Of a stretch of 64,000 nucleotides of DNA, positions 22,718 to 35,704 are shown piece after piece (within the stretch, counting starts at the first letter, position 1; every line of letters starts with the position of its first letter). A model generated the notes under the pieces. That model had not been told where the DNA came from, searched no databases, and saw only the letters and a list, made by a program, of their open reading frames with translations. The translations under genes and the position numbers were made by a program. The stretch lies in IMG/VR virus record IMGVR_UViG_3300035703_000008, positions 62,001 through 126,000 of that record. The stretch is one strand, 5' to 3'.

Positions 22718-23670
22718 TCACCGGTGGACTTGGTTTCATCGGACACAATATAGTAGCACAGCTACAGGCTCTGGGTCATGCAATGGTCATCGTCGATGCT
22801 GTGTCAGACTATGGCATCATACCAAGAGATGAGCTAGAAGGTCTGGTAAGAGAACGAGCACGTCTCATCGATCAGACTGATCTCTATCTCACTGACATCA
22901 CAGATCCCGGCCTGGATCACATCTTCCAAGACCACGACATTGCCACAGTGATCCACTTGGCCAGTTTTCCCCGACAAAAAGTGGTTAATCGAGATCCAGT
23001 GTCGGGCAGTCGCGTCATGAGTGAAGGCCTGCTCAATCTCCTGGAACTCAGTGTTGCCCATCATGTTGATCGATTCGTGTATGTAAGTTCCAGCATGGTC
23101 TATGGTGAATTCACTGATGACACCACCGAAGACCATCCATGTGCTCCACAAGGACAATACGGGATCATGAAGCTGGCTGGAGAATGGCTCACACGCGACT
23201 ACACCCAACGCCGTGGCATGTCGCATGTGATCGTGCGTCCCAGTGCTGTGTACGGAGCCAGAGACGTGGAAGATCGCGTGGTCAGCCAGTTCATGATGGC
23301 TGCACATCGCGGCGAAACTCTACGAGTGCGTGGTGCCGGCGAGTGCCTAGATTTCACTGATGTGAGAGACACTGCACGCGGTATCGTTCTCGCTGCTGTC
23401 ACCCCTGCTGCTGCCAACAACACTTACAATATCACTCGTGGACGCGGTCGTAGCTTGCAGGAAGCCGCAGAGATCGCTGTAAAAATCTCAGGATCGGGCA
23501 CTATCGATGTTCTGGATCGCGATCCTTTGTTCCCCAGTCGGGGTGCATTAAATATAGATCGAGCCCGGAGAGATCTTAGCTTTGAACCCACTATAGACAT
23601 CGAGCAAGGCTTTGAAGACTACTACCGCTGGATTACGGATCCCATTCGCAGGTCTACCTCGTCAGTATAA
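22696..23670 (+). CDS. NAD-dependent nucleotide-sugar epimerase/dehydratase (extended SDR)
   Basis: ILVTGGLGFIG, HLAS, SSSMVYG, catalytic YGIMK (YxxxK), VRPSAVYG. Confidence 0.92.
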   Translation: MAQGKILVTGGLGFIGHNIVAQLQALGHAMVIVDAVSDYGIIPRDELEGLVRERARLIDQTDLYLTDITDPGLDHIFQDHDIATVIHLASFPRQKVVNRDPVSGSRVMSEGLLNLLELSVAHHVDRFVYVSSSMVYGEFTDDTTEDHPCAPQGQYGIMKLAGEWLTRDYTQRRGMSHVIVRPSAVYGARDVEDRVVSQFMMAAHRGETLRVRGAGECLDFTDVRDTARGIVLAAVTPAAANNTYNITRGRGRSLQEAAEIAVKISGSGTIDVLDRDPLFPSRGALNIDRARRDLSFEPTIDIEQGFEDYYRWITDPIRRSTSSV

Positions 23671-24739
23671 TACCCTGAGGTCAGAGATCCTTGACATCAC
23701 TGACCAGGTGTTGAGGTCAGGTCAAGTGATGTCTGGCAACTACACTGCCGAGTTCGAGCATTGGCTGGCACGCAAGAATAGATCAAAATTCGCGATCACG
23801 TGTCATTCTGGAACACAGGCCTTGGAGATCATCGCCGAGTTTTATCGTCAGCACTGGCCCTGCGATCCAGGACACACTCCCACGGTGGTCATGCCCAGCA
23901 TTTCTTATGTGGCCACTGCCAATGCATTTGTTCGAGCTAGATGGGATATAAGATTCGCTGATGTTGATGCCCATGGCATGCTTTCACTCAAGGACGTGCC
24001 CAACGATTCTCTCACACACTGGAATGCCATCTGCTTGGTGGGCTTGTATGGCCAGAGTGTGTATCAGTATTCAGACACACAGTTTTGGAAAAGTGTGCGA
24101 TACAAAAATCAAATCGTGATCGAGGATGGCGCCCAACATTGGCTCAGTGCCGGATCTTCGCGCATAGGGCATGCCACTGCCATAAGTTTTGATCCTACCA
24201 AAAATCTCGGCAACTACGGAAACGGTGGGGCGGTAGTCACCGACGACGAGGATCTAGCTACATTTGCACGAGCTTGGTGCGCGAATGGCAAGCCATATTA
24301 TCGCCAACCGGGCACCAACAGTAGGATGAGCGAAATAGATTGTGCCCAGATGTTGGTAAAAGTCAATCACTTGGACCAATGGCAGGTCCGTCGCCGGCAT
24401 ATCACTGAATACTGGTATAGTCGGCTGGCAGGAAAACGACAGGTGCGTAGTCTTGCAGATCTATCCAACATGGATACCCACTGTTTCCATAAATTTGTGA
24501 TTGATGCTGATCACAGGAATGACCTGCAAAGACATCTAAAAGAACACGGAATAGAAACTCGTGTACACTATGACCAGGCCTTGTTTGAACATGCTGGACT
24601 GAGTCAATTCATCAACCCCGGTGTGCTAAGTTCAGCGGCTTCGTTGTGTCGTCGTGTACTGAGCTTGCCACTCTACCCCGAACTCACGGATCTAGAAGTA
24701 GACTACATCATCGACCAGGTGATAGATTTCTCTTCATAA
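23612..24739 (+). CDS. DegT/DnrJ/EryC1/StrS-family PLP-dependent sugar aminotransferase
   Basis: SGTQAL, VATANA, IEDGAQ, SFDPTKNLGNYGNGG (PLP lysine), GTNSRMSE, VLSLPLYPEL. Confidence 0.93.
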   Translation: MKTTTAGLRIPFAGLPRQYNTLRSEILDITDQVLRSGQVMSGNYTAEFEHWLARKNRSKFAITCHSGTQALEIIAEFYRQHWPCDPGHTPTVVMPSISYVATANAFVRARWDIRFADVDAHGMLSLKDVPNDSLTHWNAICLVGLYGQSVYQYSDTQFWKSVRYKNQIVIEDGAQHWLSAGSSRIGHATAISFDPTKNLGNYGNGGAVVTDDEDLATFARAWCANGKPYYRQPGTNSRMSEIDCAQMLVKVNHLDQWQVRRRHITEYWYSRLAGKRQVRSLADLSNMDTHCFHKFVIDADHRNDLQRHLKEHGIETRVHYDQALFEHAGLSQFINPGVLSSAASLCRRVLSLPLYPELTDLEVDYIIDQVIDFSS

Positions 24740-27700
24740 ATGCATAGCTGGCCAACCAGGCCCACTCGTAGCTTTTCCTGAGCTGTTCAAAATCCCCACC
24801 GACTTCTTCGTAGTAGGCCACGGCATCTTCGGCTCCCCACACTGACCATTCGCCGTAGGGTCCTTCTCCACCAGTGAGCCAGGCACGGAGACGATATTCG
24901 TTTTCTACGTCAGGCAGACTGGCTCGTAGTTTGATCGCTTCGCGGAAGGCCGTGCGCCACGCAGTCCAGGCATCGGTGTTGTAGCGAGCCACACCCGACA
25001 TGATGGGCACTACTTCGTGTGCATCGTCTAGTGTGAAGTCCAAGCCACGACCGGGATTGGCCAACACCAGGTTCTTGTTGTAGGCGATCATGGCCTGGTG
25101 TCCATAGATCAAGCGATTCACAGGATTCCTAGCATGGAAGATGTAGTGCTTGGGCTGTTGCATGCGATCCGGCTGCCATGACCAGTCAAAGTCTGGATTC
25201 ACATCCAACTTGGCAAACACAGCAAAGAACCAAGGCGTTTCACTGGCTCGAGCAGCGGCATGATAAGCAGCAGCACGGCCCGGCACTCGATCCACTCGCA
25301 CCAAGCGGTTGGGTTGGCCTTGTTTGCGCAACATCAGGCTGCCCCAGTTTCGGTCAGCTTGGGGTTCTCCATTGGAGATGTAGACGATGTCCAAGGGCTG
25401 GCCTTTTAGTGTGTCGCGATGGCTGCGATCGATGTGGGGATAATCGTACATCTGTGTTCGAATGTAAGGTACAGCATTCTTGGGCACCACCACTACGCCA
25501 GCACCGGGATCCATGGGAATGATGGTCTTGGTCTTTTCTCTCCAGAGACTCACTGTGGGCATCTTGGCGTTGCCCACATCTCTGTTGGCGAACACGGCCA
25601 AGGGTCCCGAGAACGTGCTCGAGATCACTGTGTCCACATGCGTGTCCTGATCATTGCGGATCACTGGCATGGGCCAACGCGGTACTCTCTGATCTTCGCA
25701 GTAGTTCACGGTCTCAAACCAATCTAGCAGTTCCAGTTCGTTGATCTTGTCTCTCAACGCCCGCACAGGCACATAGAATGTGTCACCGAATTTCTGTTCC
25801 GCACTGGGGAACACGTGCAGCATGTCACGTTGCCAGGCTTCGGGTTGCCACGAGAAATCAAATCTCGAATAGTCGCATACACTGCCCGTCACCCATATGT
25901 GTTCGGCTTCGACGTCGGCGATCAAGCGTTTTAGAGTGTCAAGATAATTATCAAAGTATCTCGCGGTCTTGACCACGCGATAGCGACCCTGCAGGAACTC
26001 AATGGTCTTTGGTGCTTCGGCATTGCCAAAATCTATCACATAGATGTCCGAGGCATCGGCAGGTGCTACCACTTGTTGATCCTGCACAAAATTAAGATTG
26101 GGAAACTCTTCTATGCCCGCAGCCCACTTGGCGTGCCGCTCGAACTCCCAGCGATTGATCAGGAATGTGTCCGACCATTTGTTCCACTGGCTACCAAACA
26201 CGTGAGTCATGAAGCTCTGCCAGGGCTGTGCGTGCCAAGCGAAATCAAAGTCTGAGTAGTCGTTTTCGCTGCCTATGACCCAGAATCTCATGCTCTTGGT
26301 CTTGGTGAGACAGCGTTGTATGGTGTCCATCACAGAATTTACATAACGCACTTTTTGTATGTGAGGATACTGTTCGCGAAGGCGTTCAAACCTCGACGCG
26401 CTCATGGCATTGCTGCGATCCATGTAAAAAATATCCAATACACGCACCACGGATTGAGGCTGTTCTTGGATGATCTGTGGAGGATCGCCGGCAAACTTGA
26501 GATCTTGGGCTCCGGGCACAGTGTAGGTGAGTCCCACTGATGCTTGATATTCTGTACCGAAGTGGTAGATATAAGGCGGCTCTTGTGGGTCGGGTATCCA
26601 TGAATAGTCGATGACATCGGCATCTACTTCTTCGGGCACTGACCATCGCGCGCGATCAGGCAAGATGCGGGCCAGTGGTTCGGTCATGAACTTGCGCTCA
26701 GTGGCACCTGGCACATGATATTCAATGGTGCTCATCTGTGTGGCAGGCCACCACTGGTTGCCAAACACATAGATGTAAGGCGGTGAGCCAGGATCGGGCC
26801 GCCAGGAACGATCAAACTCGAACACATGATCAGTAGTCACTTGCCAACACTGATCGGTGGCAACAAGACGTGCCTGCGGTTCAGACATGAATTTGCGTTC
26901 TGTTGCCCCAGGAACGCGATATTCTACCGTGGGCATGATCTCTGCAGGCCACCACTGATTGCCGAACACATAGATGTAAGCGGGCGATCCAGGATCGGGT
27001 TCCCACGAGTAGTCAAACTCGCAGTCATAATGCGTGACGAACTCGTTGGGTCTGGCTGCGCGTCGTGCTCGCGGTTCCGACATGTACTTGATCTCTGTGG
27101 CTCCAGTCACACGATACTGCAAGGCCGGACGTTGTTCAGGTGTGAGCCATTGGTTACCAAACACATAGACGTAGGCGGGATCTGTGGGATTTGGGCGCCA
27201 CGAATAATCAAACTCTTCGATGTCATCCAACTGCTCCCAGGCCGAGACATCCTGTGCTAGAGTGGCCACCGGTTCTGCCATGTACTTGATCTCAGTGCCA
27301 CCTGTGTTGTATACCACAGTGGGTTCCAGCACAGCAGGGTTCCACTGGTTGCCAAACACATAGGTCATGGGAGGATCAAAGGGATTGGGTTCCCACGAGT
27401 AATCAAAGTCGCTGACAGCGAGATTGTGGCCAAACAACGCAGGCTGCGGCAGTCTGCGTGTGCGTGTGTCCATGTACTTGACTTCGGTGGCACCCGGTAC
27501 CGTATATCGCACACTGGCTTTGTATTCAGCCGGGTTCCACTGGTTGCCCCACACATAGATGTAGGCCGGATCCCGAGGATTGGGTCGCCAGGTCCAGTCC
27601 CAATCCTCTTCGGCTATGGGTTCGAGGATTTCCCAGTGATCGCGCGATTCTGACAACTGCGCTCGCGGTTCATCCACGAACTTTTCTTGAGTCGCTCCAG

Positions 27701-30062
27701 CCACACGATAACGAACAGTGGGCATGACAGTACCAGGATAATGCTGATTACCAAAAACATAGATGTAGGGTTCCTCTGTGGTGTCAGGATGCCAGCTAAA
27801 ATCAAAATCGGTGATAGATTCTAACACCTCCCAGTGATGATCCTGGGAGGCCTTCCTTTGATGCACAATGTCAACAAACTTGCGTTCTTGGGCTCCAGGA
27901 ACCACATAGCAGGCTCCGCCGTTTCTCTGCCACTGGGTGGCAAACTCATAGATGTAGGCAGGGTCGCCCGGATCGGGACACCAGGTATAGTCCACGGTGC
28001 TGTCGTCAATGACATCGGGCGTGACCCAGTTTTCGAGGTTGGGCAGCAGCCTAGGACCTCCGGTCATGTACTTGCGCTCAGTGGCGCCCGGTACACGATA
28101 TTCCAGGGTGGGCATCTTTTCTGCAGGCCAGTGTTGATTGCCCCACACATAGATATAGGCCGGATCTCGGGGGTGTGGTCTCCATGACCAATCAAACGAT
28201 GCATCGTCGATGCTGTGCAATCTGTGCCAATTGATCTGGCTGGCCGACAATGTGGCACGTGGAGACTCGTGGTATTTGCGTTCTTCCGCGCCGGGCATGT
28301 GGAATACGGGTCCACCTTCGTCGTACCATTGCGTGCCGAACTCGTGGGTGTAGAGCGGATCAAGTGGGTTAGGATGCCAGGTGTAGTCAAACCCCACAAT
28401 GTTGTCGGGCACGGACCACAACGACAAGTCCTTGATTGATCTCACCCGGGGAGATTCCAGCAACTTGACCTCTCCGGCTCCGGGTACTGTGTACGTGACG
28501 CCACTGGCTGGTTGATGCTGGCTGGGGAAGTGATAGATGTAGGCAGGTTCTAGGGGATTGGGATGCCAGGTATAATCCACACTATCGGCATTGATCCAAG
28601 CTGGCACCGACCATGGCTCACGATCTCGAGCATGTGCTACTACCTGGAAGGCGTCTACGAGCTTGATCTCTGTGGCCCCAGGTACAGTGTACGTGACACC
28701 ACTCACTGGTTGATGTTGATCTGGGAAGTGGTAGATGTAGGGCGGATCAAGTGGATTGGGATGCCAGGTGTAGTCAACGCCAGTGACTTCAGCAGGTACG
28801 TTCCATGCGGTATGTTCAACCCGAGTGGTCCTGACTTGGAAAGCATCCACCATCTTGATCTCTGTAGCCCCAGGTACTGTATAGGTAACGCCACTAATGG
28901 GTTGGTGTTGATCCGGGAAGTGATAGATGTAGGGCGGATCTAGTGGGTTTGGGTGCCAAGTATAGTCAACATTGTCTACAAATTCAGGCACCGTCCAGTA
29001 TTCGCGATTTTCTTTGATTGCCTTGGCTTGGAAGGCATCCACCATCTTGATCTCTGTAGCCCCAGGTACTGTGTAGGTAACGCCACTTACCGGTTGATGT
29101 TGATCCGGGAAGTGATAGATGTAGGGTGGGTCAAGTGGGTTTGGGTGCCAGGTGTAATCAATACCTACTACTCCATCGGGCACTGACCAGTTTGTGTTGT
29201 CTGTTTTTTTAGTGGTTACTTGGAAAGCATCTGTGAGCTTGATCTCCGTGGCACCAGCGACCGTATAGGTAACGCCACTTACCGGTTGATGTTGATCCGG
29301 GAAGTGATAGATGTAGGGTGGGTCAAGTGGGTTTGGGTGCCAGGTGTAATCAATACCTACTACTCCATCGGGCACTGACCAGTTTGTGTTGTCTGTTTTT
29401 TTAGTGGTTACTTGGAAAGCATCCGTGAGCTTGATCTCTGTGGCACCAGGCACTGTATAGGTAACGCCACTCACTGGCTGGTGTTGATCTGGAAAGTGAT
29501 AGATGTAGGGCGGATCCAGTGGGTTTGGATGCCAGGTGTAGTCGACGCCGGTGATGTGTTGTGGCACCATCCAATTGGTAGGATCAGGTCTGCGTTGTGC
29601 TCGTTGATCGTGTACCAGTTTCGTGCCAGCAGTGCCGGGATACACGGGCCCGCCTGCACTCTGCCACTGTGTACCAAAATGATATTCATAGTCGGGTTCA
29701 GCGAAATCTGGATGCCAAGAGTAATCGAACCCAGTAGTGCCACGTGTGTTGAGCCACACAGACTCGTCGGCACGTCGTGTTATGCGTCGATCCTGATGAT
29801 AGTTGGTGTCAGTGTAGCCTGATTTGGGCACTAGGTATGTGCCTGAGTCTCGCTGCCATTGGCTGGGCCATGCATGACGTTGATGGCTTTGCCAAGGCAC
29901 CGGCTCCCAAAGCCAATCCCACCCTTGATAGTCCGATAAGTAGTTTACGATCCAGAAATATCGAGTGCGACTCAGTTCGCAGGCTTCTTGGATCGATGCT
30001 GCAGATCGTTCATGCGGGAAAAGTCCCGGCTTCTTACCACTGATATAGAAAACATCAAACAT
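24708..30062 (-). CDS. 1784-aa multidomain protein: 17 tandem ~64-aa repeats flanked by glycosyltransferase-like domains
   Basis: Repeat core D(Y/F)xWxPxPxDPxYxYxF(G/P)xQ. The C-terminal domain (LDIVYISNGE...AYHAAA...WRTAFREAIKL) resembles the 46116 protein. Confidence 0.85.
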   Translation of the reverse strand: MFDVFYISGKKPGLFPHERSAASIQEACELSRTRYFWIVNYLSDYQGWDWLWEPVPWQSHQRHAWPSQWQRDSGTYLVPKSGYTDTNYHQDRRITRRADESVWLNTRGTTGFDYSWHPDFAEPDYEYHFGTQWQSAGGPVYPGTAGTKLVHDQRAQRRPDPTNWMVPQHITGVDYTWHPNPLDPPYIYHFPDQHQPVSGVTYTVPGATEIKLTDAFQVTTKKTDNTNWSVPDGVVGIDYTWHPNPLDPPYIYHFPDQHQPVSGVTYTVAGATEIKLTDAFQVTTKKTDNTNWSVPDGVVGIDYTWHPNPLDPPYIYHFPDQHQPVSGVTYTVPGATEIKMVDAFQAKAIKENREYWTVPEFVDNVDYTWHPNPLDPPYIYHFPDQHQPISGVTYTVPGATEIKMVDAFQVRTTRVEHTAWNVPAEVTGVDYTWHPNPLDPPYIYHFPDQHQPVSGVTYTVPGATEIKLVDAFQVVAHARDREPWSVPAWINADSVDYTWHPNPLEPAYIYHFPSQHQPASGVTYTVPGAGEVKLLESPRVRSIKDLSLWSVPDNIVGFDYTWHPNPLDPLYTHEFGTQWYDEGGPVFHMPGAEERKYHESPRATLSASQINWHRLHSIDDASFDWSWRPHPRDPAYIYVWGNQHWPAEKMPTLEYRVPGATERKYMTGGPRLLPNLENWVTPDVIDDSTVDYTWCPDPGDPAYIYEFATQWQRNGGACYVVPGAQERKFVDIVHQRKASQDHHWEVLESITDFDFSWHPDTTEEPYIYVFGNQHYPGTVMPTVRYRVAGATQEKFVDEPRAQLSESRDHWEILEPIAEEDWDWTWRPNPRDPAYIYVWGNQWNPAEYKASVRYTVPGATEVKYMDTRTRRLPQPALFGHNLAVSDFDYSWEPNPFDPPMTYVFGNQWNPAVLEPTVVYNTGGTEIKYMAEPVATLAQDVSAWEQLDDIEEFDYSWRPNPTDPAYVYVFGNQWLTPEQRPALQYRVTGATEIKYMSEPRARRAARPNEFVTHYDCEFDYSWEPDPGSPAYIYVFGNQWWPAEIMPTVEYRVPGATERKFMSEPQARLVATDQCWQVTTDHVFEFDRSWRPDPGSPPYIYVFGNQWWPATQMSTIEYHVPGATERKFMTEPLARILPDRARWSVPEEVDADVIDYSWIPDPQEPPYIYHFGTEYQASVGLTYTVPGAQDLKFAGDPPQIIQEQPQSVVRVLDIFYMDRSNAMSASRFERLREQYPHIQKVRYVNSVMDTIQRCLTKTKSMRFWVIGSENDYSDFDFAWHAQPWQSFMTHVFGSQWNKWSDTFLINRWEFERHAKWAAGIEEFPNLNFVQDQQVVAPADASDIYVIDFGNAEAPKTIEFLQGRYRVVKTARYFDNYLDTLKRLIADVEAEHIWVTGSVCDYSRFDFSWQPEAWQRDMLHVFPSAEQKFGDTFYVPVRALRDKINELELLDWFETVNYCEDQRVPRWPMPVIRNDQDTHVDTVISSTFSGPLAVFANRDVGNAKMPTVSLWREKTKTIIPMDPGAGVVVVPKNAVPYIRTQMYDYPHIDRSHRDTLKGQPLDIVYISNGEPQADRNWGSLMLRKQGQPNRLVRVDRVPGRAAAYHAAARASETPWFFAVFAKLDVNPDFDWSWQPDRMQQPKHYIFHARNPVNRLIYGHQAMIAYNKNLVLANPGRGLDFTLDDAHEVVPIMSGVARYNTDAWTAWRTAFREAIKLRASLPDVENEYRLRAWLTGGEGPYGEWSVWGAEDAVAYYEEVGGDFEQLRKSYEWAWLASYAFMKRNLSPGR
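26520..29740 (-). repeat. in-frame tandem repeat array (~192-nt period, 17 units)
   Basis: 17 occurrences of the repeat core counted in the translation. Units at 29081 and 29273 are identical over roughly 150 nt. Confidence 0.85.
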
Positions 30063-31173
30063 GATTAGGATAGATGAGCTTTATAACAATACCTTTTGGC
30101 CTTACATCACCAAGAACATTCCCTTGACCCGACTGTTTTTCTGCGATCCGCCGGGGAGGAGCGACCCTGATGCGTTGTTTAACTTCGGCAGTGATACCAT
30201 AGAGTCTAATTATATATTCTTACATGACCAAGAGCCAATACATCTGGACATACATCGGCCCTTGTTTGATGATGTTGTTCGCCGGAATCTCGATCTCAAC
30301 AACGGACAAGGTGCCCGACATCGGGCCATAGTCACCAGCGAGTGGAACAGTGAATTCGTTGATCAAGTATGTAGCCAATATGACTGGAGCCACTACTATT
30401 ATTTCTGGCACGGATGGGCTGCATTGGATTGGTATCGTGGATATCACCGAACATTCCTGATGACTCCACCCGAAGATCGCGAGATACGCCGGAGCTTTAT
30501 CAGTCCCAATCGCATCATCGGCGGCAAGCGTGATCACCGTGTGCTGCTGCTGTATCATATCTTCAAGAACGGCGTCCGTAATGCCTGGGTCAGTTGCCCC
30601 GAAACATGTCCCTACGAAAACGTGCCTATCTCCGACATCGGTGCTCGATTCAGCGATCGTTACCAAGACATCGAACAGGTATTCAAAGATGCTCCTGTAC
30701 CTTTGCATTTCCCCGGAGAGACCGATCATCCCATGCACTCTTGCTGGTTGAGCTTGTTTGATCAAGTGGATGAGACCTTGGCCTATGTGGTGACAGAAAC
30801 TGTGTTTTTTGGGCGCAGAAATCACATCACAGAAAAAACATTCAAGCCCATCTGTCAGCAGCTACCATTCGTGCTGGCATCAACCGCAGGCAGCCTCGAG
30901 TATCTACGACGCTATGGTTTCCAGACATTTTCATCGATCTGGGACGAGAGCTACGACGAAGAAACCAACGATCTACTGCGCATAGAAAAGATCGCTGCTC
31001 TTCTCCGAGATCTCGATGCGATGACGCCGCGCGAACTCAATCAAATGTATCAGGCCGTCATGCCCATAGTAAAACACAACTATGAGCATTTCTACGGCGG
31101 TGGGTTTGAACGATTGCTCTGGCCCGAACTCACTGGTATGCTAGACAGGATCACCAATGATTTTCGAGTTTGA
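30061..31173 (+). CDS. glycosyltransferase-like protein (TEKTFKP family)
   Basis: VVTETVFF...HITEKTFKPI...PF...L.YLRRYGFQTF..IWDESYD. Confidence 0.65.
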   Translation: MIRIDELYNNTFWPYITKNIPLTRLFFCDPPGRSDPDALFNFGSDTIESNYIFLHDQEPIHLDIHRPLFDDVVRRNLDLNNGQGARHRAIVTSEWNSEFVDQVCSQYDWSHYYYFWHGWAALDWYRGYHRTFLMTPPEDREIRRSFISPNRIIGGKRDHRVLLLYHIFKNGVRNAWVSCPETCPYENVPISDIGARFSDRYQDIEQVFKDAPVPLHFPGETDHPMHSCWLSLFDQVDETLAYVVTETVFFGRRNHITEKTFKPICQQLPFVLASTAGSLEYLRRYGFQTFSSIWDESYDEETNDLLRIEKIAALLRDLDAMTPRELNQMYQAVMPIVKHNYEHFYGGGFERLLWPELTGMLDRITNDFRV

Positions 31174-32317
31174 TCGTTACTCGCAAGACAAACCCTATCC
31201 CAATCTCGCACGGCATCGCGCCGAAGCCTACACCCCCGAGTGGCGCAGGTTCAGCCATCATTGGCCGTTTTCAGAACCGCCCATGCTGATCGAATACATG
31301 CAAGACGAAGGCTTGGATTGGCGCAGCTCGGGACCCAGGGTGTTGTTGGTGGCCGTGAGTTTCTTTGATTTCAGCATACGATGGTTTGATCTCGTACCCG
31401 ATGAGCATCTCCGTGATCTACGCAAGGGCGATCTACATCTGTGTTTTTTCTACAGCGAAGGCGACAATCCTGCGGTGATACGCCGGCATCTCGAACAACA
31501 ATGTGAGGCTGCTGGCGTGAGCACAGATCAACTGATGTTGATCACTGCCAACTCAGCTGCTGACCTCTTGCCCAACTCGGCCTGGTTTGCCGACGACGAG
31601 CTCTTGTTCCGCAAAAGAAATCGTCGGCAGCCAGCCTTGCCTTATCACGAGCAGCCACGCCGTAGGATGTTTACAGCTCTGGTTCGCACACACAAATGGT
31701 GGAGAGCCACTGTGATGGCTGACCTATGGCGTCGAGACTATCATCAACTCGGTTACTTCAGTTACAATCCCGATGTAGCCGTAGGCGAACCTGAATCGGA
31801 AAATCCCATCGAAGTAGATCGCTGGGCAGGATTGAGATCAGCCACACACGAATTTTTGAAACAGAGATTCCAGGCCGACTCGCTCACAGCCGACGAGCAC
31901 AACGATCATCATCTCTTGGTGGCCGATCATTTCCAAGACAGCTATCTCAACATCGTGATAGAAACACACATGGATGTGGATCAAAGCGGAGGAGTGTTCC
32001 TCACCGAAAAAACATTCAAACCCATCAAGCACGCACAACCATTCGTGATATTTGGTGCCGCACACAGCCTAGCACGACTGAGAGACCTCGGATATCGGAC
32101 CTTTGACTCTGTGATTGATCCCAGCTATGACAGCATCGACAACACCACCGAACGCTATGAATGCTTGATGTATCTCTTGGATGAGATGCTGAGTCGTGGG
32201 CCCGAATACATGCATCGTCAGCTCCGGGCCTGTCGTACAGACCTCGAGCACAACCAGCAGCATTTTTTGTCAGACAAGAAACAGCGTTTAAATAACTTAC
32301 TAGGAAAATTCAAATGA
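31157..32317 (+). CDS. glycosyltransferase-like protein (TEKTFKP family)
   Basis: LNIVIETH...FLTEKTFKPIKHAQPF...LRDLGYRTFD.VIDPSYD. Confidence 0.65.
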   Translation: MIFEFDRYSQDKPYPNLARHRAEAYTPEWRRFSHHWPFSEPPMLIEYMQDEGLDWRSSGPRVLLVAVSFFDFSIRWFDLVPDEHLRDLRKGDLHLCFFYSEGDNPAVIRRHLEQQCEAAGVSTDQLMLITANSAADLLPNSAWFADDELLFRKRNRRQPALPYHEQPRRRMFTALVRTHKWWRATVMADLWRRDYHQLGYFSYNPDVAVGEPESENPIEVDRWAGLRSATHEFLKQRFQADSLTADEHNDHHLLVADHFQDSYLNIVIETHMDVDQSGGVFLTEKTFKPIKHAQPFVIFGAAHSLARLRDLGYRTFDSVIDPSYDSIDNTTERYECLMYLLDEMLSRGPEYMHRQLRACRTDLEHNQQHFLSDKKQRLNNLLGKFK

Positions 32318-33339
32318 AAAGAGTAAACTCATACACCAGCTGGCAACCCTTGGAAGAAGTCATCGTGGGCCGTGCCTATAGCCCCGACTATTTTGACTTC
32401 ATCGACGATGCCCAGGTCAGGAATCAACTGCAACAGATCCTGGCCGAGACCGAAGAAGATCTCAACAATCTTGCTCGTACCATCCAAGAATACGGAGCTG
32501 TAGTACAACGTCCTGATCTTCCCAGCAAGGACCAGTTCGTATGGTTCCAGACCGAAGGCGGTGGCGCACCACTTCCACCACTCACTCCTCGGGACTGGCA
32601 GATCACGCTAGGCGACAAGCTGTTGCGTGTGCTCAACATGAAAGAGCTGGATTCGATCTGTGCCCAGTACGGAGATCAAGTGATAAACCCGCATCGCAGC
32701 GAGTGGGACGAAGACTGCATACTCAACGGTGCATCAGCATCGTGCATCGTGCGTGTGGGCCGTGACGTGTTCTTTGACAATTCAGACTTCCTGCGCCCTG
32801 ATCAGACCCGTTGGATCGTTGACAATGTTCTAGGTCCCGAGTACCGCATACACGAAGCTGTCACCGACGGGCACGGCGATGCTGTGTTTGCCATCCTCAA
32901 GCCCGGTGTTCTCTTGAGTTCCAAGCATGATGTGAATCTAGACTTGGCACGCGACTTTCCGGGATGGGATGTATGCAAGATCTGGGATAGCTCGATCTGG
33001 GCAGCCATGGAAGTGGGCAAGTTCAAGTACGAAGAGTCACCAGGTGCATGGTATGTGCAAGGTCAGACACCCACAGCCGAGTTTACCAAGTTCGTGGATA
33101 CCTATCTCAACAAGTGGACCGGGTTCGTGGCAGAAACAGTGTTTGATGTCAACTGCTTGGTTCTCGACGAGTCTAACGTGATATTCTCGGCCTACAACAA
33201 AGAAGTGTTTGCCTACTGCGAAAAGCACGGTATCAACCCCATCATCTCAGAACTGCGTCACAGTTATTTCTGGGACGGCGGTATATCTTGTTGCACACAA
33301 GACATACACCGACGTGGTGGTCTTGAAACTTATCTTTAA
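32314..33339 (+). CDS. amidinotransferase (glycine/inosamine-phosphate amidinotransferase family)
   Basis: VNSYTSWQPLEEVIVGR, PRD, DGHGD (catalytic His), FDVNCL, DGGISCCT (catalytic Cys). Confidence 0.85.
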   Translation: MKRVNSYTSWQPLEEVIVGRAYSPDYFDFIDDAQVRNQLQQILAETEEDLNNLARTIQEYGAVVQRPDLPSKDQFVWFQTEGGGAPLPPLTPRDWQITLGDKLLRVLNMKELDSICAQYGDQVINPHRSEWDEDCILNGASASCIVRVGRDVFFDNSDFLRPDQTRWIVDNVLGPEYRIHEAVTDGHGDAVFAILKPGVLLSSKHDVNLDLARDFPGWDVCKIWDSSIWAAMEVGKFKYEESPGAWYVQGQTPTAEFTKFVDTYLNKWTGFVAETVFDVNCLVLDESNVIFSAYNKEVFAYCEKHGINPIISELRHSYFWDGGISCCTQDIHRRGGLETYL

Positions 33340-34112
33340 CGAGTACCAAACCCGGGGTCTGGATACCGAACACAGTTGGGATTTACGATCTGGAATCCTG
33401 ACAGATCTATTTCCTGTACTCCGGGACGATAATCTTCAATGTCGTTTATTATTGTTTTGGCCAACGCCAGGTTGTTCTCAGCTCCAAAATGATTGTAGCG
33501 GTTTTCGTCTACAGAAATAGCCGATCTGATTTCATCATCGGTACCAGTTCTCTCTCCCACAGAAATCTGCACCAACGGTGTGGTATAGATCACACAGTCA
33601 TCGCCGAGATAATGTTGTATTTGTTGTGTTTCCGTAAAACAATGGAAGTGTATCACAGGAATGCCCGGAAACATCGACGACAATTCTCGAAACCATTGTA
33701 TCATTGCCCATTGGTGGAAATTCCCGTCCCAGAGATGGGTATAATAAAATTTTCTTGCCTTGACTACGTCTGGGTCACTGGGTCTCACTGCTAAATCATC
33801 GTGACGAACCATAAGGTCATTGGTATCGTGACTGATCAACATCCTCCCCCAATCAGTGTGCATACATACCACTGCTTTCAATCTCGATCGATCCTGTGGA
33901 TTTCGATCGAGATGGCTGGTCATATGATGTCGGCTATACCACCAACCTTTGCCAGCAAAACCAAATAGTAACTGATCAGCATCAAAGTGGTCGCAGATCA
34001 GGTCCTGATAAGAGGGGTAGTCCTTGGAATAAAGCTGGTCCTTGTGCCAGCAAGCCCGTCCAGTATTAGAGAAACTGTCTCCAAAAAATAATATAGCCGG
34101 TTTTACGAGCAT
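33336..34112 (-). CDS. SGNH/GDSL-like hydrolase or acyltransferase
   Basis: LFFGDSFS, GFAGKGWW, NHFGAENN. Confidence 0.6.
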   Translation of the reverse strand: MLVKPAILFFGDSFSNTGRACWHKDQLYSKDYPSYQDLICDHFDADQLLFGFAGKGWWYSRHHMTSHLDRNPQDRSRLKAVVCMHTDWGRMLISHDTNDLMVRHDDLAVRPSDPDVVKARKFYYTHLWDGNFHQWAMIQWFRELSSMFPGIPVIHFHCFTETQQIQHYLGDDCVIYTTPLVQISVGERTGTDDEIRSAISVDENRYNHFGAENNLALAKTIINDIEDYRPGVQEIDLSGFQIVNPNCVRYPDPGFGTR

Positions 34113-35584
34113 ACTTTTACACCATACCGCTCCTGGAATCGATCAGCATCTGCACGATCATTGACCATGGGCTCTCCCCGGATATTGAGACTGGTGTTGA
34201 GCAGCATGGGACATCCTGTCAGCAAGAACCAGGCTTCCAATAGCTGTCTGATACCCGATCCATCAGCGGGCACGGTCTGCACTCGGGCTGTGTTGTCTAC
34301 ATGGCATATGGCCGGGAAACTGGCAGGATCTCGAACTCGTGCCACGATCTGCATGTAAGGACTGGAGGTCCACTTGTCAGGCATGTCAAAGTAGTCGTTG
34401 ACATGCTCTTCTAGGATCACTGGAGCAAAGGGACGGAACTTTTGTCTGCGCTTGATCTCATTGACACGATCTTTGATGTCAGGACCGCGTGGGTCAGCCA
34501 AGAGACTGCGATTGCCCAAGGCCCTGGGACCAAACTCAGCGCGACCGCTGGCCACTCCCACGATCTTATTGATCACTAGTTCGTCCAACAGAGGTTTCAC
34601 AGGATAGGCACCGGGTATGAGTCGTCCAAGGAAAGCGTCGCGCCAGTTGAGTTGCTTTCCATAACTGAGAGCCGCAGCACCGAGACTGCTACCAGCATCA
34701 CCGGGATTGGGCATGATCCATATGCGATCAAATACTTCGCCCAGTCTGCGATTGGCTACGCAGTTGAGAGCCACTCCGCCCATGTAAACGAGATTGGGAC
34801 TATTGGTGATGCGTCGAGCATGCTGCATCACGCTCATGATCAAGCGTTCAGTGATGTGCTGTGCGCAGGCTGCCACATGCACGTCTTCCATGTCATAGAC
34901 CACGTTGTCGGGCATGCCGATATGGAAATTGTGTTGTAGCTCGATGCGATCTAGATCAGCCACTACCTTGCGTTCTACAGCCTGATAGTCCTGGTAGCTG
35001 CCCCAGGCAGCCATGCCCATGGTGATGTATTCCTCGTCCATGGGACGGAGACCCACATGTTTGGTCACGGCCGAGTAAAACAATCCGATCGAATGCGGAT
35101 AACCTTGGCGCCACAAACGTAGGTACTGTGCGCGGCCTTGGCTGTCATACCAGGCTTGGTAGATCGAAATAGTGTCCATCTCACCGATGGCATCAATCAC
35201 CACCACGGCCGCGAATTCAAACGGAGATGTCTGGAATCCTGCAGCAGCATGGCTGAGATGGTGGCTGTGTCCTTGTATTCGTGCTGGACGTTGGAGCCAA
35301 TCGCCGAGATGTTTTTTTACTGCGCTCTTGACTGTCCAGGCACCAAACTCTCGTTGACCAGACCATAGTTGCTGGAGATTGTGCATCCACGGACGTTCGT
35401 AGAACGCGATGGTGTCAATGTCATAGTCGCAGCATTCACGCAAGAGATCAGGATGTATCTCTGCATCGTTCTTGCGTTTGCTGTATCTTTCGCTGTGTCC
35501 GGCGAATTCGATGTCACCATCGCTGTTGATCACGCTCACAGCAGCGTCATGGAAACCGGCACTGATTCCTAGATAGTGTTTCAT
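34103..35584 (-). CDS. O-carbamoyltransferase (NodU/CmcH/TobZ family)
   Basis: LGISAGFHDAA, ERYSKRK, HHLSHAA, GGVALNC, GDAG, GRAEFGPRALGNRSLLADP, RPFAP, LLNTSLN. Confidence 0.93.
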   Translation of the reverse strand: MKHYLGISAGFHDAAVSVINSDGDIEFAGHSERYSKRKNDAEIHPDLLRECCDYDIDTIAFYERPWMHNLQQLWSGQREFGAWTVKSAVKKHLGDWLQRPARIQGHSHHLSHAAAGFQTSPFEFAAVVVIDAIGEMDTISIYQAWYDSQGRAQYLRLWRQGYPHSIGLFYSAVTKHVGLRPMDEEYITMGMAAWGSYQDYQAVERKVVADLDRIELQHNFHIGMPDNVVYDMEDVHVAACAQHITERLIMSVMQHARRITNSPNLVYMGGVALNCVANRRLGEVFDRIWIMPNPGDAGSSLGAAALSYGKQLNWRDAFLGRLIPGAYPVKPLLDELVINKIVGVASGRAEFGPRALGNRSLLADPRGPDIKDRVNEIKRRQKFRPFAPVILEEHVNDYFDMPDKWTSSPYMQIVARVRDPASFPAICHVDNTARVQTVPADGSGIRQLLEAWFLLTGCPMLLNTSLNIRGEPMVNDRADADRFQERYGVKVCS

Positions 35585-35682
35585 TTGTAGATAAATGGAT
35601 CTCTTTTGCGCAGCTCTTTGAGCTTTTTACGATAACGTATTTCTAGCTTGATCTTGTTGATGAGATTGATTAACCATTTCAT
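35581..35682 (-). CDS. small basic protein, 33 aa, coupled to the carbamoyltransferase
   Basis: MKWLINLINKIKLEIRYRKKLKELRKRDPFIYK*, with an ATGA overlap. Confidence 0.65.
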   Translation of the reverse strand: MKWLINLINKIKLEIRYRKKLKELRKRDPFIYK

Positions 35683-35704
35683 GGCAGTTTCCTTGTAAAA
35701 TCTG

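What the first reader, a model, noticed from the sequence alone, without database searches (positions are those of the whole stretch)
23612..35584. Aminoglycoside-like tailoring enzyme set: aminotransferase, amidinotransferase and carbamoyltransferase
Seen: intact catalytic motifs (SFDPTKNLG, DGHGD...GGISCC, HHLSHAA...GRAEFGPRALG). Established: the same families tailor aminocyclitols and amino sugars in streptomycin (StsC, StrB1) and tobramycin (TobZ) biosynthesis, and the twitch-type radical SAM BtrN oxidises an aminocyclitol. Inference: the phage may make a guanidino-, carbamoyl- and amino-substituted sugar (cationic surface decoration or a small molecule). A phage amidinotransferase in a glycan context stands out most.
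Basis: partly seen in the sequence, partly recalled or inferred. Interest (0 to 1): 0.72.

Follow-up and report, generated by a model that had tools for sequence, protein, structure and literature searches.

The report
Jumbo-phage glycan island with amidinotransferase
A widespread group of giant freshwater phages carries a conserved ~24-kb block of sugar-building and sugar-decorating genes. One of them is an arginine-type amidinotransferase from a large, uncharacterised, virus-only enzyme family, so the phage probably makes an unusual decorated glycan whose structure and target are unknown.

Summary
The window encodes a DegT aminotransferase with its PLP lysine, a NodU/TobZ-type O-carbamoyltransferase, and a true relative of AGAT/StrB1 amidinotransferases.

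- The unannotated genes between them are two GT-B glycosyltransferases and a multi-domain GT-A glycosyltransferase carrying a hypervariable 64-residue repeat array.
- Two more GT-B paralogues and five N-twitch radical-SAM genes follow on the other strand.
- The block is syntenic in 54-55 of 55 related ~340-kb lake-phage contigs. The amidinotransferase is its most conserved gene (median 84% identity).

"Aminoglycoside-like" is only an analogy:
- No cyclitol synthase is encoded.
- The amidinotransferase sits in a separate virus-only family (707 clusters at 50% identity), outside the StrB1/AGAT clade.
- It keeps the catalytic Cys, the His and both guanidinium-binding Asp, but not the triad Asp.

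DNA carbamoylation or glycosylation is unlikely, because no hydroxymethylase was found in near-complete relatives.

Best reading: a virus-encoded glycan assembly and tailoring island. The amidino acceptor (sugar amine or small amine) and the glycan's target are unproven.

The parts
21794..22465 (+). ThyX flavin-dependent thymidylate synthase. It is a frequent neighbour of the island, not necessarily part of it.
   Evidence: PF02511 E=1e-42. Present in 48/55 full-flank related loci. It also lies near amidinotransferase homologues in the divergent loci L008, L018 and L144.
22696..23670 (+). Extended SDR of the GalE/epimerase type, acting on a nucleotide sugar.
   Evidence: PF01370 E=2e-42. Best PDB hits are UDP-glucose 4-epimerase and UDP-glucuronate 4-epimerase. 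The sequence shows GxxGxxG, 'SSSMVYG' and YxxxK, but not the Asp-Glu pair of 4,6-dehydratases (that last point rests on my own knowledge of RmlB). Present in 54/55 loci.
23612..24739 (+). DegT/DnrJ/EryC1-family PLP-dependent sugar aminotransferase. The start codon is uncertain.
   Evidence: PF01041 E=6.6e-58. The PLP lysine is in 'SFDPTKNLG'. PDB neighbours are QdtB, DesV, WbpE and NtdA. Present in 54/55 loci.
24708..30062 (-). 1784-aa multi-domain GT-A glycosyltransferase. An N-terminal small domain is followed by ~15-20 tandem ~64-aa 'D[YF]xWxPxPxDPxYIY' repeats and a C-terminal core with tandem GT-A domains.
   Evidence: No Pfam hit. AF2 model of the last 655 aa has pLDDT 78. Foldseek: mimivirus R699 6e-7, human LH3, K4CP chondroitin polymerase and heparosan synthase. 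VIA: Z 10.9 for B4GALNT1, 8.8 for PBCV-1 A64R. Repeats are listed. Homologues range from 530 to 2047 aa. Present in 55/55 loci.
28641..29543 (.). DNA-level tandem repeat (192-bp period, 4.7 copies, 82% matches) inside the GT-A gene. This is the youngest part of the repeat array.
   Evidence: Tandem Repeats Finder.
30061..31173 (+). GT-B fold glycosyltransferase 'GTa', with an invariant TEKTFKP motif.
   Evidence: No Pfam, PHROG or PDB sequence hit. AF2 model pLDDT 88, pTM 0.88. All top-50 Foldseek hits are GT-B enzymes. VIA Z: 11.3 T4 beta-glucosyltransferase, 10.4 T4 alpha-glucosyltransferase, 9.8 alpha-1,3-fucosyltransferase. The ESM Atlas lead is GT10. Present in 55/55 loci.
31157..32317 (+). 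GT-B glycosyltransferase 'GTb', a paralogue of GTa. Its stop overlaps the amidinotransferase start by 4 nt.
   Evidence: Aligns with GTa with an invariant T-E-K-T-F-K block. Present in 55/55 loci. The overlap with the amidinotransferase is also seen in L001 and L003.
32314..33339 (+). Amidinotransferase of a virus-specific family (Cys326 nucleophile, His187, Asp94 and Asp189).
   Evidence: PDB; family size; residues; tree. Present in 55/55 loci at median 84% identity, the highest in the island.
33336..34112 (-). Putative SGNH/GDSL-type esterase or acyltransferase. It is a variable member of the island.
   Evidence: N-terminal 'FFGDSFSN' and C-terminal 'D..RYNHFG' motifs, read from the sequence. 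No Pfam, NCBIfam or PHROG hit. Detectable in only 10/55 loci. The assignment is inference.
34103..35584 (-). ATP/carbamoyl-phosphate-dependent O-carbamoyltransferase (NodU/CmcH/TobZ/NovN family; phage 'Nol-like').
   Evidence: Pfam N and C domains, PDB hits, phrog_1601 E=1.5e-94. Present in 55/55 loci at median 63% identity.
35581..35682 (-). Small basic 33-aa ORF (MKWLINLINK...), also called at the same position in relatives.
   Evidence: 33-aa genes are called at the same place in L001-L004. Function unknown.
36420..37562 (-). Conserved 380-aa protein of unknown function.
   Evidence: Present in 55/55 loci at median 61% identity. No Pfam, PHROG or Atlas lead.
37483..38793 (-). N-terminal-twitch radical SAM enzyme.
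   Evidence: NF033640 E=1e-83. CNFKCRTC motif.
38780..39760 (-). GT-B paralogue (TEKTFKP motif).
   Evidence: BLASTP against GTa E=1e-19, 34% identity over the C-terminal half. Motif shown.
39757..40983 (-). N-terminal-twitch radical SAM enzyme.
   Evidence: NF033640 E=4e-97.
40980..42269 (-). N-terminal-twitch radical SAM enzyme.
   Evidence: NF033640 E=5e-125.
42241..43599 (-). Radical SAM paralogue that Pfam misses.
   Evidence: CQLACSYC motif. 32% identity, E=4e-80, to the 44713-46122 radical SAM. phrog_1802 radical SAM. 49% identical homologue 2 kb from the carbamoyltransferase in Ralstonia phage RsoM2USA.
43590..44756 (-). GT-B paralogue (RTEKIAKP motif).
   Evidence: BLASTP against GTb E=3e-15.
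44713..46122 (-). N-terminal-twitch radical SAM enzyme.
   Evidence: NF033640 E=1e-93.

Best explanation
The region is the core of a conserved, virus-encoded glycan assembly and tailoring island in a clade of ~340-kb freshwater jumbo phages.

Shown:
- It encodes a nucleotide-sugar SDR and a DegT aminotransferase.
- It encodes four paralogous GT-B glycosyltransferases and one multi-GT-A glycosyltransferase with a hypervariable repeat array.
- It encodes an O-carbamoyltransferase, an amidinotransferase and five N-twitch radical-SAM enzymes in this block (a sixth lies at 2595-3911).
- The genes are kept together across the clade.

Inferred mechanism:
- The SDR, perhaps with a radical-SAM oxidoreductase, and DegT convert a host nucleotide sugar into an amino sugar.
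- The amidinotransferase takes the amidino group of L-arginine onto Cys326, releasing ornithine, and passes it to a primary amine. The most likely acceptor is the sugar amine, which would give a guanidino sugar.
- The carbamoyltransferase makes carbamoyl-AMP from carbamoyl phosphate and ATP and O-carbamoylates a sugar hydroxyl.
- The radical-SAM enzymes perform further redox, epimerisation, deoxygenation or methylation-type tailoring.
- The glycosyltransferases assemble the product on an acceptor.

The acceptor is unknown. The island lies directly downstream of tail-fibre and baseplate genes on the same strand, so virion fibre or capsid proteins are the leading candidate. Host envelope glycans are the alternative.
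For: - Enzyme identities.
- Glycosyltransferase folds for the previously unannotated ORFs.
- Synteny: epimerase 54, DegT 54, GT-A 55, GTa 55, GTb 55, amidinotransferase 55, carbamoyltransferase 55 and radical SAMs 55 of 55 full-flank IMG/VR loci. The same order is seen in ENA and JGI lake contigs.
- GTb and the amidinotransferase overlap by 4-13 nt in the window, L001 and L003.
- The same partners recur around divergent family members (about 30-40% identity). Of 41 such loci, 15 have N-twitch radical SAMs, 14 have TEK-type GT-B genes and 5 have the carbamoyltransferase.
- L009 has two GT-B paralogues, UDP-glucose dehydrogenase and a short DegT immediately upstream of the amidinotransferase.
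- In cyanophage S-SCSM2R a StrB1-type amidinotransferase from the other clade sits among six glycosyltransferases, a short DegT and a radical SAM. This is an independent recurrence of the same association.
- Tail-fibre-like genes lie at 50273-51808 and 52632-63998, and a baseplate-like gene at 51860-52465, on the same strand.
Against: - No product, acceptor or activity has been observed.
- The amidinotransferase lacks the AGAT Asp254 equivalent (Ser141), so its chemistry may differ.
- It is far more conserved (84%) than DegT (54%), the epimerase (56%) or the GTs (42-54%). That fits an enzyme working on an invariant small metabolite at least as well as one working on a lineage-specific sugar.
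- Distant family members lie in non-glycan contexts.
- No sugar nucleotidylyltransferase or 4,6-dehydratase-type keto-sugar generator was found in the island, so the route to DegT's keto substrate is unexplained.
- Adjacency to the fibre genes is weak evidence for the acceptor.
Confidence: 0.45

Rival explanations
1. The amidinotransferase is an auxiliary metabolic enzyme acting on a small non-sugar amine (glycine, lysine, or a polyamine as in HsvA). It would make guanidino compounds such as amidino-polyamines. Its place inside the glycan island would not reflect a shared pathway.
For: - It is the most conserved gene in the island: 84% against 42-72% for its neighbours.
- It is more conserved than a baseplate-like core protein: 83-91% (L088, L042, L069, L040) against 75-80% in the same four genomes.
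- A distant member overlaps an AdoMet-decarboxylase gene beside RNR, MazG and ThyX (L008).
- Others sit near TctA transporters.
- HsvA is among the nearest solved relatives. That it is a polyamine amidinotransferase is my own knowledge.
- The S-SCSM2R homologue ORF266, in the same viral family, was detected in the virion proteome (PMC12801897).
Against: - It overlaps GTb in the window and in L001-L004, and the GTa-GTb-amidinotransferase order is kept in every full-flank clade locus.
- Over half of the divergent loci (22/41) carry radical SAM, GT-B or carbamoyltransferase partners.
- AGAT's carboxylate-binding Arg322 position is not conserved in the family (reading of the alignment), which argues against glycine as the acceptor.
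Confidence: 0.25
2. The island hypermodifies phage DNA. The GT-B enzymes would glycosylate, and the carbamoyltransferase would carbamoylate, hydroxymethyl-pyrimidines, as in T4 glucosyl-hmC and 5-carbamoyloxymethylcytosine.
For: - A phage NodU/TobZ-type carbamoyltransferase has been shown to make 5-carbamoyloxymethylcytosine (PMC8670742).
- The two best structural matches of GTa are the T4 DNA beta- and alpha-glucosyltransferases (Z 11.3 and 10.4).
- ThyX is adjacent in 48/55 loci.
Against: - No ThyA-like hydroxymethylase (PF00303) is present in this record or in five 97-100% complete relatives. The published system depends on that co-occurrence. In that paper, carbamoyltransferases on unmodified contigs were instead flanked by unrelated genes such as glycosyltransferases.
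- No TGT/DpdA.
- Tet_JBP was not found, but the control for that search was silent.
- The Z gradient from T4 BGT to generic GT-B enzymes is shallow (11.3 to 9.8).
- Five glycosyltransferases, including tandem GT-A domains of the polymerase or protein-glycosylating type, are more than DNA glycosylation usually needs.
Confidence: 0.08
3. The genes make a diffusible aminoglycoside-like small molecule (an antibiotic or signal) during infection, as the first reader's analogy and the S-SCSM2R paper's 'antibiotic synthesis genes' suggest.
For: - Family-level parallels exist with StsC/BtrS, StrB1, TobZ and BtrN.
- DegT's best PDB hit is named glutamine--scyllo-inositol transaminase.
- An MFS transporter and two adenylating enzymes lie upstream in this genome.
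Against: - No DOIS/DHQS-type or inositol-phosphate synthase in five genomes.
- The amidinotransferase is outside the StrB1 clade.
- The one upstream gene tested (the adenylating enzyme at 8957-10414) is absent from four near-complete relatives, so that block looks accessory rather than part of the conserved island.
- Five glycosyltransferases, one with polymerase-like tandem GT-A domains, point to a polymer or glycoconjugate.
Confidence: 0.07
4. The protein is not a transferase. Having lost the triad Asp, the viral family acts as a hydrolase (deiminase/DDAH-like) or as a non-catalytic binder of guanidino compounds.
For: - The AGAT Asp254 column is Asp in 7/7 cellular homologues but variable in the viral family. 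It is Ser141 in the window.
- Some sources auto-name relatives 'N-dimethylarginine dimethylaminohydrolase'.
Against: - The family profile hits only true amidinotransferases in PDB (1e-33 to 4e-31) and no ADI, DDAH or agmatine deiminase at E<=1.
- Cys326 and Asp189 are invariant (53/53) and His187 and Asp94 nearly so (52/53).
- A family-specific, nearly invariant Asp321 (FWDGG, where cellular enzymes have Gly) could take over the missing acid's role. This is inference.
Confidence: 0.1

Closest known systems
L-arginine:glycine amidinotransferase (AGAT) and L-arginine:inosamine-phosphate amidinotransferase StrB1, with HsvA, SxtG and CyrA-type enzymes
   Same: - Full-length homology (profile E 1e-33 to 4e-31).
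- The same N-terminal 'SYxEWxPLxEVIVG' and C-terminal 'GGxxHC..D..R.G.L..Y' blocks.
- Catalytic Cys, His and the two guanidinium-binding Asp are conserved.
   Different: - A separate clade, split from cellular enzymes by a 100% SH-aLRT branch.
- No Pfam PF02274 hit.
- The triad Asp254 position is not conserved.
- A family-specific FWDGG motif with Asp321.
- The AGAT Arg322 position is not conserved.
- Members come almost only from viral contigs or MAG contigs.
Virus-encoded glycosylation machineries: chlorovirus PBCV-1 (A64R and others), mimivirus fibril glycans (R699, plus an L136 DegT-type viosamine pathway recalled from my own knowledge), mycobacteriophage virion glycosylation
   Same: - The virus carries its own nucleotide-sugar tailoring enzymes (SDR, DegT) and several GT-A and GT-B glycosyltransferases clustered near structural genes.
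- The GT-A core matches mimivirus R699 (Foldseek 6e-7) and PBCV-1 A64R (Z 8.8).
   Different: - Here the island adds an amidinotransferase, an O-carbamoyltransferase and a battery of N-twitch radical-SAM enzymes.
- No glycan or glycoprotein has been observed.
- The host is bacterial.
Cyanophage S-SCSM2R 'antibiotic synthesis genes' (ORF305 DegT-like, ORF306 radical SAM, ORF309 inosamine amidinotransferase) and ORF266 'glycine amidinotransferase' (PMC12801897)
   Same: - A phage amidinotransferase lies beside glycosyltransferases, a DegT-like protein and a radical SAM.
- ORF266 belongs to the same viral family as the window's enzyme (29% identity; tree) and lies next to KdsA/KdsB.
   Different: - ORF309 is of the cellular StrB1 type.
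- Its neighbourhood has 2OG-Fe(II) oxygenases rather than an N-twitch radical-SAM battery, and no adjacent carbamoyltransferase.
- Function is unknown there too.
Phage 5-hydroxymethylcytosine carbamoyltransferase (PMC8670742)
   Same: Same NodU/TobZ-type two-domain carbamoyltransferase family, encoded by a phage.
   Different: That enzyme co-occurs with a ThyA-like dCMP hydroxymethylase, dCMP deaminase and a MazG-like gene. None of these flanks the gene here, and PF00303 is absent from complete relatives.
Aminoglycoside tailoring set (StsC/BtrS, StrB1, TobZ, BtrN)
   Same: The same four enzyme superfamilies occur together.
   Different: - No cyclitol-forming enzyme.
- The twitch domain is N-terminal (NF033640). 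In BtrN it is C-terminal (my own knowledge).
- The amidinotransferase is not a StrB1 orthologue.
- Multiple glycosyltransferases of polymer or protein-glycosylating type are present.

Membership tests
Amidinotransferase (AGAT/StrB1 branch of the guanidino-group-modifying superfamily) | Full-length sequence homology to characterised amidinotransferases, and not to deiminases or DDAH | tested here: met
   phmmer: AGAT 6.5e-16, StrB1 4.3e-14. Family profile: SxtG 1.3e-33, AGAT 4.8e-33, HsvA 1e-32, StrB1 3.9e-31, with no ADI, DDAH or AgD at E<=1.
Amidinotransferase (AGAT/StrB1 branch of the guanidino-group-modifying superfamily) | Catalytic Cys (AGAT C407) and His (H303) | tested here: met
   C326 is invariant (53/53) and H187 is present in 52/53 of the viral family. 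Both align with C407 and H303.
Amidinotransferase (AGAT/StrB1 branch of the guanidino-group-modifying superfamily) | Third triad residue Asp (AGAT D254, StrB1 D179) | tested here: not met
   The column is Asp in 7/7 cellular homologues. In the viral family it is S11/D7/N7/A5/E4/P3 and others. It is Ser141 in the window.
Amidinotransferase (AGAT/StrB1 branch of the guanidino-group-modifying superfamily) | Guanidinium-binding Asp pair (AGAT D170, D305) | tested here: met
   D94 (PRD motif) in 52/53 and D189 in 53/53.
Amidinotransferase (AGAT/StrB1 branch of the guanidino-group-modifying superfamily) | Placement inside the StrB1 or AGAT orthologous clade (needed to infer the acceptor) | tested here: not met
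   IQ-TREE: 53 viral-family rows are separated from 7 StrB1/GATM-like rows by a 100% SH-aLRT branch. The tree is unrooted, the cellular references carry only PGAP-assigned names, and no ADI outgroup was available.
Amidinotransferase (AGAT/StrB1 branch of the guanidino-group-modifying superfamily) | Arg-dependent amidino transfer with ornithine release | not testable with these tools
   Needs an enzyme assay.
NodU/CmcH/TobZ O-carbamoyltransferase | Kae1-like N domain plus YrdC-like C domain above Pfam cut-offs, with the metal-binding HxxxH motif | tested here: met
   PF02543 114.9 bits (cut-off 24) and PF16861 171.8 bits (cut-off 27). 'HHLSHAA' is present. NovN, GdmN and TobZ hits.
NodU/CmcH/TobZ O-carbamoyltransferase | Orthology to NodU itself | tested here: not met
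   NF041651 scores 132 bits against a cut-off of 1000.
DegT/DnrJ/EryC1 sugar aminotransferase | Pfam domain above cut-off and the PLP-binding lysine | tested here: met
   197 bits against a cut-off of 19.8. The Lys is in 'SFDPTK'. No NCBIfam equivalog cut-off is reached, so the sugar and ring position are undetermined.
Aminoglycoside/aminocyclitol biosynthetic cluster | Carbocycle-forming enzyme (DOIS/DHQS-type or myo-inositol-1-phosphate synthase) | tested here: not met
   PF01761 and PF01658 are absent from G000 and four 97-100% complete relatives, and the controls rang.
Phage 5hmC-carbamoyl or glucosyl-hmC DNA hypermodification system | ThyA-like pyrimidine hydroxymethylase in the genome | tested here: not met
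   PF00303 is absent from G000 and five near-complete relatives, and the controls rang in 10/14. Tet_JBP was also not found, but its control was silent, so that search is inconclusive.
N-terminal-twitch radical SAM (NF033640) | Score above the curated cut-off and a CxxxCxxC motif | tested here: met
   Five window proteins score 273-418 bits against a cut-off of 170. The motifs of the four inside the island, and of the sixth paralogue, are; that paralogue was found by BLASTP.
GT-B glycosyltransferase | Two-Rossmann-domain GT-B fold | tested here: met
   Model pLDDT 88. The top 50 Foldseek hits are all GT-B. VIA gives Z 8-11.3 over 230-300 aligned residues.
GT-B glycosyltransferase | Assignment to a CAZy family (for example GT10) | tested here: inconclusive
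   No Pfam hit. The Atlas GT10 lead scores 0.79. FucT Z values are 8.6-9.8, not above other GT-B enzymes.
GT-A glycosyltransferase (multi-domain) | GT-A fold domains | tested here: met
   Model residues 208-337 and 426-567 match GT-A enzymes at Z 8-10.9. Foldseek gives E 6e-7 to 1e-5 for the two-GT-A-domain proteins R699, LH3 and K4CP. DxD and catalytic residues were not examined.

The most novel reading that the evidence does not exclude
The virus-only amidinotransferase family guanidinylates amino sugars. Together with an O-carbamoyltransferase and a battery of N-twitch radical-SAM sugar-tailoring enzymes, jumbo phages would then build a cationic, guanidino- and carbamoyl-bearing glycan on their virions. 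That would be a glycan chemistry not described in any organism, made by one of the most abundant freshwater jumbo-phage clades.
Probability: 0.3. Interest if true: 0.82.

Novelty: new variant of a known kind. Interest (0 to 1): 0.62.

Why it matters
Virus-encoded glycosylation is well known in giant eukaryotic viruses and has recently been shown in mycobacteriophages. Its chemistry in environmental jumbo phages is unexplored.

- This island is a core, strongly conserved feature of a very abundant lake-phage clade. At least 586 IMG/VR stretches and 1693 protein clusters at 90% identity match the amidinotransferase.
- It links three enzyme sets with no known function in phages: a virus-only amidinotransferase family of about 700 clusters at 50% identity, the 'Nol-like' carbamoyltransferases common in cyanophages and pelagiphages, and the N-twitch radical-SAM family.
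- Solving one member's substrate would annotate thousands of viral genes.
- It could reveal new sugar chemistry relevant to host recognition, virion stability or immune and defence evasion.

Tried and rejected
- Megablast of 30000-36000 against the phage collection gave no match.
- Pfam and NCBIfam on the amidinotransferase gave nothing. A PF02274 search of the genome does not even detect it, so Pfam-based surveys miss this family.
- The 52-sequence alignment was too diverse for a genome-contig scan. A 12-sequence one found only MAG contigs.
- The first IMG/VR scan returned only close relatives. Distant ones needed separate queries.
- GTa gave no PDB sequence hits and no phage tblastn hits.
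- ESM Atlas gave nothing for the 380-aa protein.
- Literature searches for jumbo phage/radical SAM/glycosyltransferase, for twitch radical SAM in phages, and for cyanophage carbamoyltransferase function found nothing relevant.
- I considered the deazaguanine DNA-modification route, because a PTPS/QueD-like gene and a possible QueE lie elsewhere in the genome. No TGT/DpdA was found, and no such genes are seen next to amidinotransferase homologues.
- I considered the upstream MFS/adenylating/acyltransferase block as part of the pathway. The adenylating enzyme is absent from four complete relatives, so the block is accessory.
- I did not fold the amidinotransferase. The tools return no coordinates, so active-site geometry could not be read.
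- I did not compare with the published 5hmC carbamoyltransferase sequence, because that would have required pasting a long sequence.
- No alternative genetic code was needed.

Full report
**What the sequence is.** The window is bases 62001-126000 of a single 208,932-bp IMG/VR virus record. The record is linear and about 60% complete by CheckV. It is a tailed jumbo phage. A baseplate-like protein at 51860-52465(-) is 52% identical to Agrobacterium phage Atu_ph07 and 44% identical to Rak2-like phages. Tail-fibre-like proteins lie at 50273-51808 and 52632-63998, the latter more than 3,783 aa with FG-GAP repeats. Close relatives are abundant in lake metagenomes from ENA and JGI, on contigs up to 350 kb. 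Five related IMG/VR records of 337-349 kb are 97-100% complete, and two have terminal repeats.

**Checking the observation.** All three enzymes and all the quoted motifs are present.
- DegT (23612-24739): PF01041 E=6.6e-58, with the PLP lysine in 'SFDPTKNLG'.
- Carbamoyltransferase (34103-35584): both Pfam domains, 'HHLSHAA' and 'GRAEFGPRALG', and PDB relatives NovN, GdmN and TobZ.
- Amidinotransferase (32314-33339): invisible to Pfam and NCBIfam. phmmer nevertheless finds AGAT, StrB1, HsvA and SxtG. A profile of 52 family members hits exactly these four at E 1e-33 to 4e-31 and hits no deiminase or DDAH.
- Active-site residues: Cys326, His187, Asp189 and Asp94 align with AGAT C407, H303, D305 and D170. 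Cys326 and Asp189 are invariant (53/53) and His187 and Asp94 nearly so (52/53).
- One exception: the AGAT Asp254 position is Asp in 7/7 cellular homologues but variable in this family, and is Ser141 here. A family-specific Asp321 (FWDGG, where cellular enzymes have Gly) is nearly invariant.

**What lies between and around these genes.**
- GTa (30061-31173) was modelled with an alignment of 45 homologues (pLDDT 88). It is a GT-B glycosyltransferase: all top Foldseek hits are GT-B, and VIA gives Z 11.3 and 10.4 for the T4 beta- and alpha-glucosyltransferases and 9.8 for fucosyltransferase and GT4 enzymes.
- GTb (31157-32317) is its paralogue, with an invariant TEKTFK block.
- The 1784-aa minus-strand protein (24708-30062) has a conserved core of tandem GT-A domains (model pLDDT 78). 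Foldseek matches mimivirus R699 (6e-7), human LH3, K4CP chondroitin polymerase and heparosan synthase. VIA gives Z 10.9 for B4GALNT1 and 8.8 for PBCV-1 A64R.
- The same protein carries an array of ~64-aa repeats. Its length varies from 530 to 2047 aa among relatives, and its youngest part is still a 192-bp DNA tandem repeat.
- Beyond the carbamoyltransferase, the minus strand continues with a conserved 380-aa unknown, then radical SAM, GT-B paralogue, radical SAM, radical SAM, radical SAM paralogue, GT-B paralogue, radical SAM. The assignments are NF033640 at E 1e-83 to 5e-125, CxxxCxxC motifs, and BLASTP values of 1e-19, 3e-15 and 4e-80.

In total the island runs from about 22.7 to 46.1 kb. 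It holds one SDR, one DegT, five glycosyltransferases, one amidinotransferase, one carbamoyltransferase, five radical SAMs and a variable SGNH-like gene.

**Conservation.** I compared 55 related IMG/VR loci that had full 10-kb flanks.

| Gene | Loci with it (of 55) | Median identity |
|---|---|---|
| Epimerase | 54 | 56% |
| DegT | 54 | 54% |
| GT-A protein | 55 | 46% |
| GTa | 55 | 54% |
| GTb | 55 | 42% |
| Amidinotransferase | 55 | 84% |
| Carbamoyltransferase | 55 | 63% |
| 380-aa unknown | 55 | 61% |
| Radical SAMs (five) | 55 | 31-72% |
| SGNH-like gene | 10 | 31% |

- The amidinotransferase is the most conserved gene in the island.
- In four complete genomes it is 83-91% identical (L088, L042, L069, L040), against 75-80% for the baseplate-like core protein.
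- GTb and the amidinotransferase overlap by 4-13 nt in the window and in relatives.

**The amidinotransferase family.**
- It has 1693 clusters at 90% identity and 707 clusters at 50% identity with E<=1e-3, of which 153 reach E<=1e-30.
- Members come from viral contigs or from MAG contigs that look viral. A scan of 185,579 species genomes found only 11 MAG contigs and no isolate.
- In a maximum-likelihood tree, 53 family rows (including cyanophage S-SCSM2R ORF266) are split from 7 StrB1/GATM-like rows by a 100% SH-aLRT branch. The 7 rows are six plasmid-borne cellular genes plus S-SCSM2R ORF309.
- The acceptor therefore cannot be inferred by orthology.

**Context of divergent family members (about 30-40% identity).**
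- Of 41 such loci, 15 carry N-twitch radical SAMs (up to eight), 14 carry TEK-type GT-B genes and 5 carry the carbamoyltransferase. 22 carry at least one of these.
- L009 has two GT-B paralogues, UDP-glucose dehydrogenase and a short DegT directly upstream of the amidinotransferase.
- L018 and L144 combine ThyX, the carbamoyltransferase and the amidinotransferase.
- Marine virus AG-345-D19 has the amidinotransferase and the carbamoyltransferase on one 8-kb contig.
- In S-SCSM2R the StrB1-type ORF309 lies among six glycosyltransferases, a short DegT and a radical SAM. The association with glycan genes has therefore arisen with both amidinotransferase clades.
- Other members sit in non-glycan settings: overlapping an AdoMet-decarboxylase gene beside RNR, MazG and ThyX (L008), or near TctA transporters.

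**Rivals tested.**
- DNA hypermodification. A phage carbamoyltransferase makes 5-carbamoyloxymethylcytosine, but it does so together with a ThyA-like hydroxymethylase (PMC8670742). PF00303 is absent here and in five near-complete relatives. TGT/DpdA is also absent. The Tet_JBP search was empty, but its control was silent.
- Aminoglycoside or aminocyclitol product. No DHQS/DOIS-type or inositol-phosphate synthase is present.
- Small-molecule export. Of the upstream MFS, adenylating and LbH genes, the one tested, the adenylating enzyme at 8957-10414, is missing from four complete relatives, so that block looks accessory.
- Hydrolase instead of transferase. This is made less likely by the exclusive PDB profile hits, but the missing triad Asp keeps it open.

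**Most likely mechanism (inference).**
- Host nucleotide sugars are the starting point, since no nucleotidylyltransferase is encoded.
- The SDR, possibly with radical-SAM enzymes, and DegT turn them into amino sugars.
- The amidinotransferase moves the amidino group of arginine through an S-amidino-Cys326 intermediate onto a primary amine.
- The carbamoyltransferase O-carbamoylates through carbamoyl-AMP.
- The five glycosyltransferases then assemble the glycan.
- The acceptor is unknown. The fibre and baseplate genes lie upstream on the same strand, and virion glycosylation has viral precedents (my own knowledge: PBCV-1, mimivirus, mycobacteriophages). Virion proteins are therefore the leading candidate.
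- I put about 0.75 on 'glycan assembly/tailoring island', about 0.4 on 'the amidino acceptor is the sugar amine', and 0.45 on the combined statement.

**Novelty and verdict.** Virus-encoded glycosylation and phage 'Nol-like' carbamoyltransferases are known. Phage amidinotransferases have been annotated before without a function (PMC12801897). Three things are new here:
- a large virus-only amidinotransferase family with an altered triad;
- its tight, conserved embedding among glycosyltransferases, a carbamoyltransferase and an N-twitch radical-SAM battery in an abundant jumbo-phage clade;
- the identification of the intervening 'hypothetical' genes as glycosyltransferases.

I class this as a new variant of a known kind, with interest 0.62.

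Noticed in passing
window 24708-30062 (-); homologues in L021-L100: The multi-GT-A protein carries ~64-aa 'D[YF]xWxPxPxDPxYIYxFGxQ' repeats. Their number is hypervariable between related phages (protein length 530-2047 aa). The motif resembles a segment found once in each GT-A-like domain of the same protein. The function of the array is unknown.
   Followed up: partly
window 7722-12590 (+): MFS transporter, two AMP-binding (adenylating) enzymes and a hexapeptide-repeat acyltransferase lie in a row. The adenylating enzyme has no homologue in four near-complete relatives, so this looks like a strain-specific accessory cassette.
   Followed up: partly
window 462-1202 (+) and 2595-3911 (+): A ferredoxin-NADP-reductase-like FAD/NAD oxidoreductase and a further N-twitch radical SAM. 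The reductase could supply electrons to the many radical-SAM enzymes.
   Followed up: no
G000:C1:20001-40000 (L122), outside the window: A second sugar and radical-SAM region. It holds two more N-twitch radical SAMs, a second SDR epimerase/dehydratase, a short (193-aa) DegT-like protein, a PTPS/QueD-like protein and a phage S-adenosylmethionine synthetase (MetK). A possible QueE-like ORF at 37691-38584 got no Pfam hit.
   Followed up: partly
window 52632-63998 (-): A giant ORF (>3,783 aa) that runs off the window end. It has FG-GAP repeats and weak T7-tail-fibre and CBM5/12 signals, so it is probably a giant fibre or adhesin.
   Followed up: no
window 15626-16717 and 18338-19627 (+): A MoxR-type AAA+ ATPase and a DUF2201 metallopeptidase-like/VWA protein, paired as in MoxR-VWA systems, just upstream of ThyX.
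   Followed up: no
L010 (NZ_JBBAKG010000003.1, 148-kb contig): A contig binned into a Haliscomenobacter MAG encodes an 84%-identical amidinotransferase. It is either a mis-binned phage contig or a hint to the host (Saprospiraceae).
   Followed up: no
L096/L128 and L051/L138 (same IMG/VR contigs): Some clade members carry a second, divergent amidinotransferase paralogue 14-25 kb from the first, embedded in the radical-SAM/GT-B battery. L102, L103 and L142 have tandem paralogues. G000's 209 kb has only one.
   Followed up: partly
L113 (Ralstonia phage RsoM2USA, 123-128 kb): This cultured 344-kb jumbo phage has a full-length carbamoyltransferase (43% identity) 2 kb from a homologue of the 42241-43599 radical SAM (49% identity). 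All the genes there are annotated 'hypothetical'. It is a tractable system for that pair.
   Followed up: partly
window 35581-35682 (-): A conserved 33-aa, strongly basic ORF (MKWLINLINKIKLEIRYRKKLKELRKRDPFIYK) lies between the carbamoyltransferase and the 380-aa unknown. In L001 and L002 a DUF1289 small Fe-S protein lies beside it.
   Followed up: no
window 32314-33339, residue 321: The viral amidinotransferase family has a nearly invariant Asp in 'FWDGGxHC', where cellular enzymes have Gly ('GGGFHC'). It may compensate for the lost triad Asp.
   Followed up: partly
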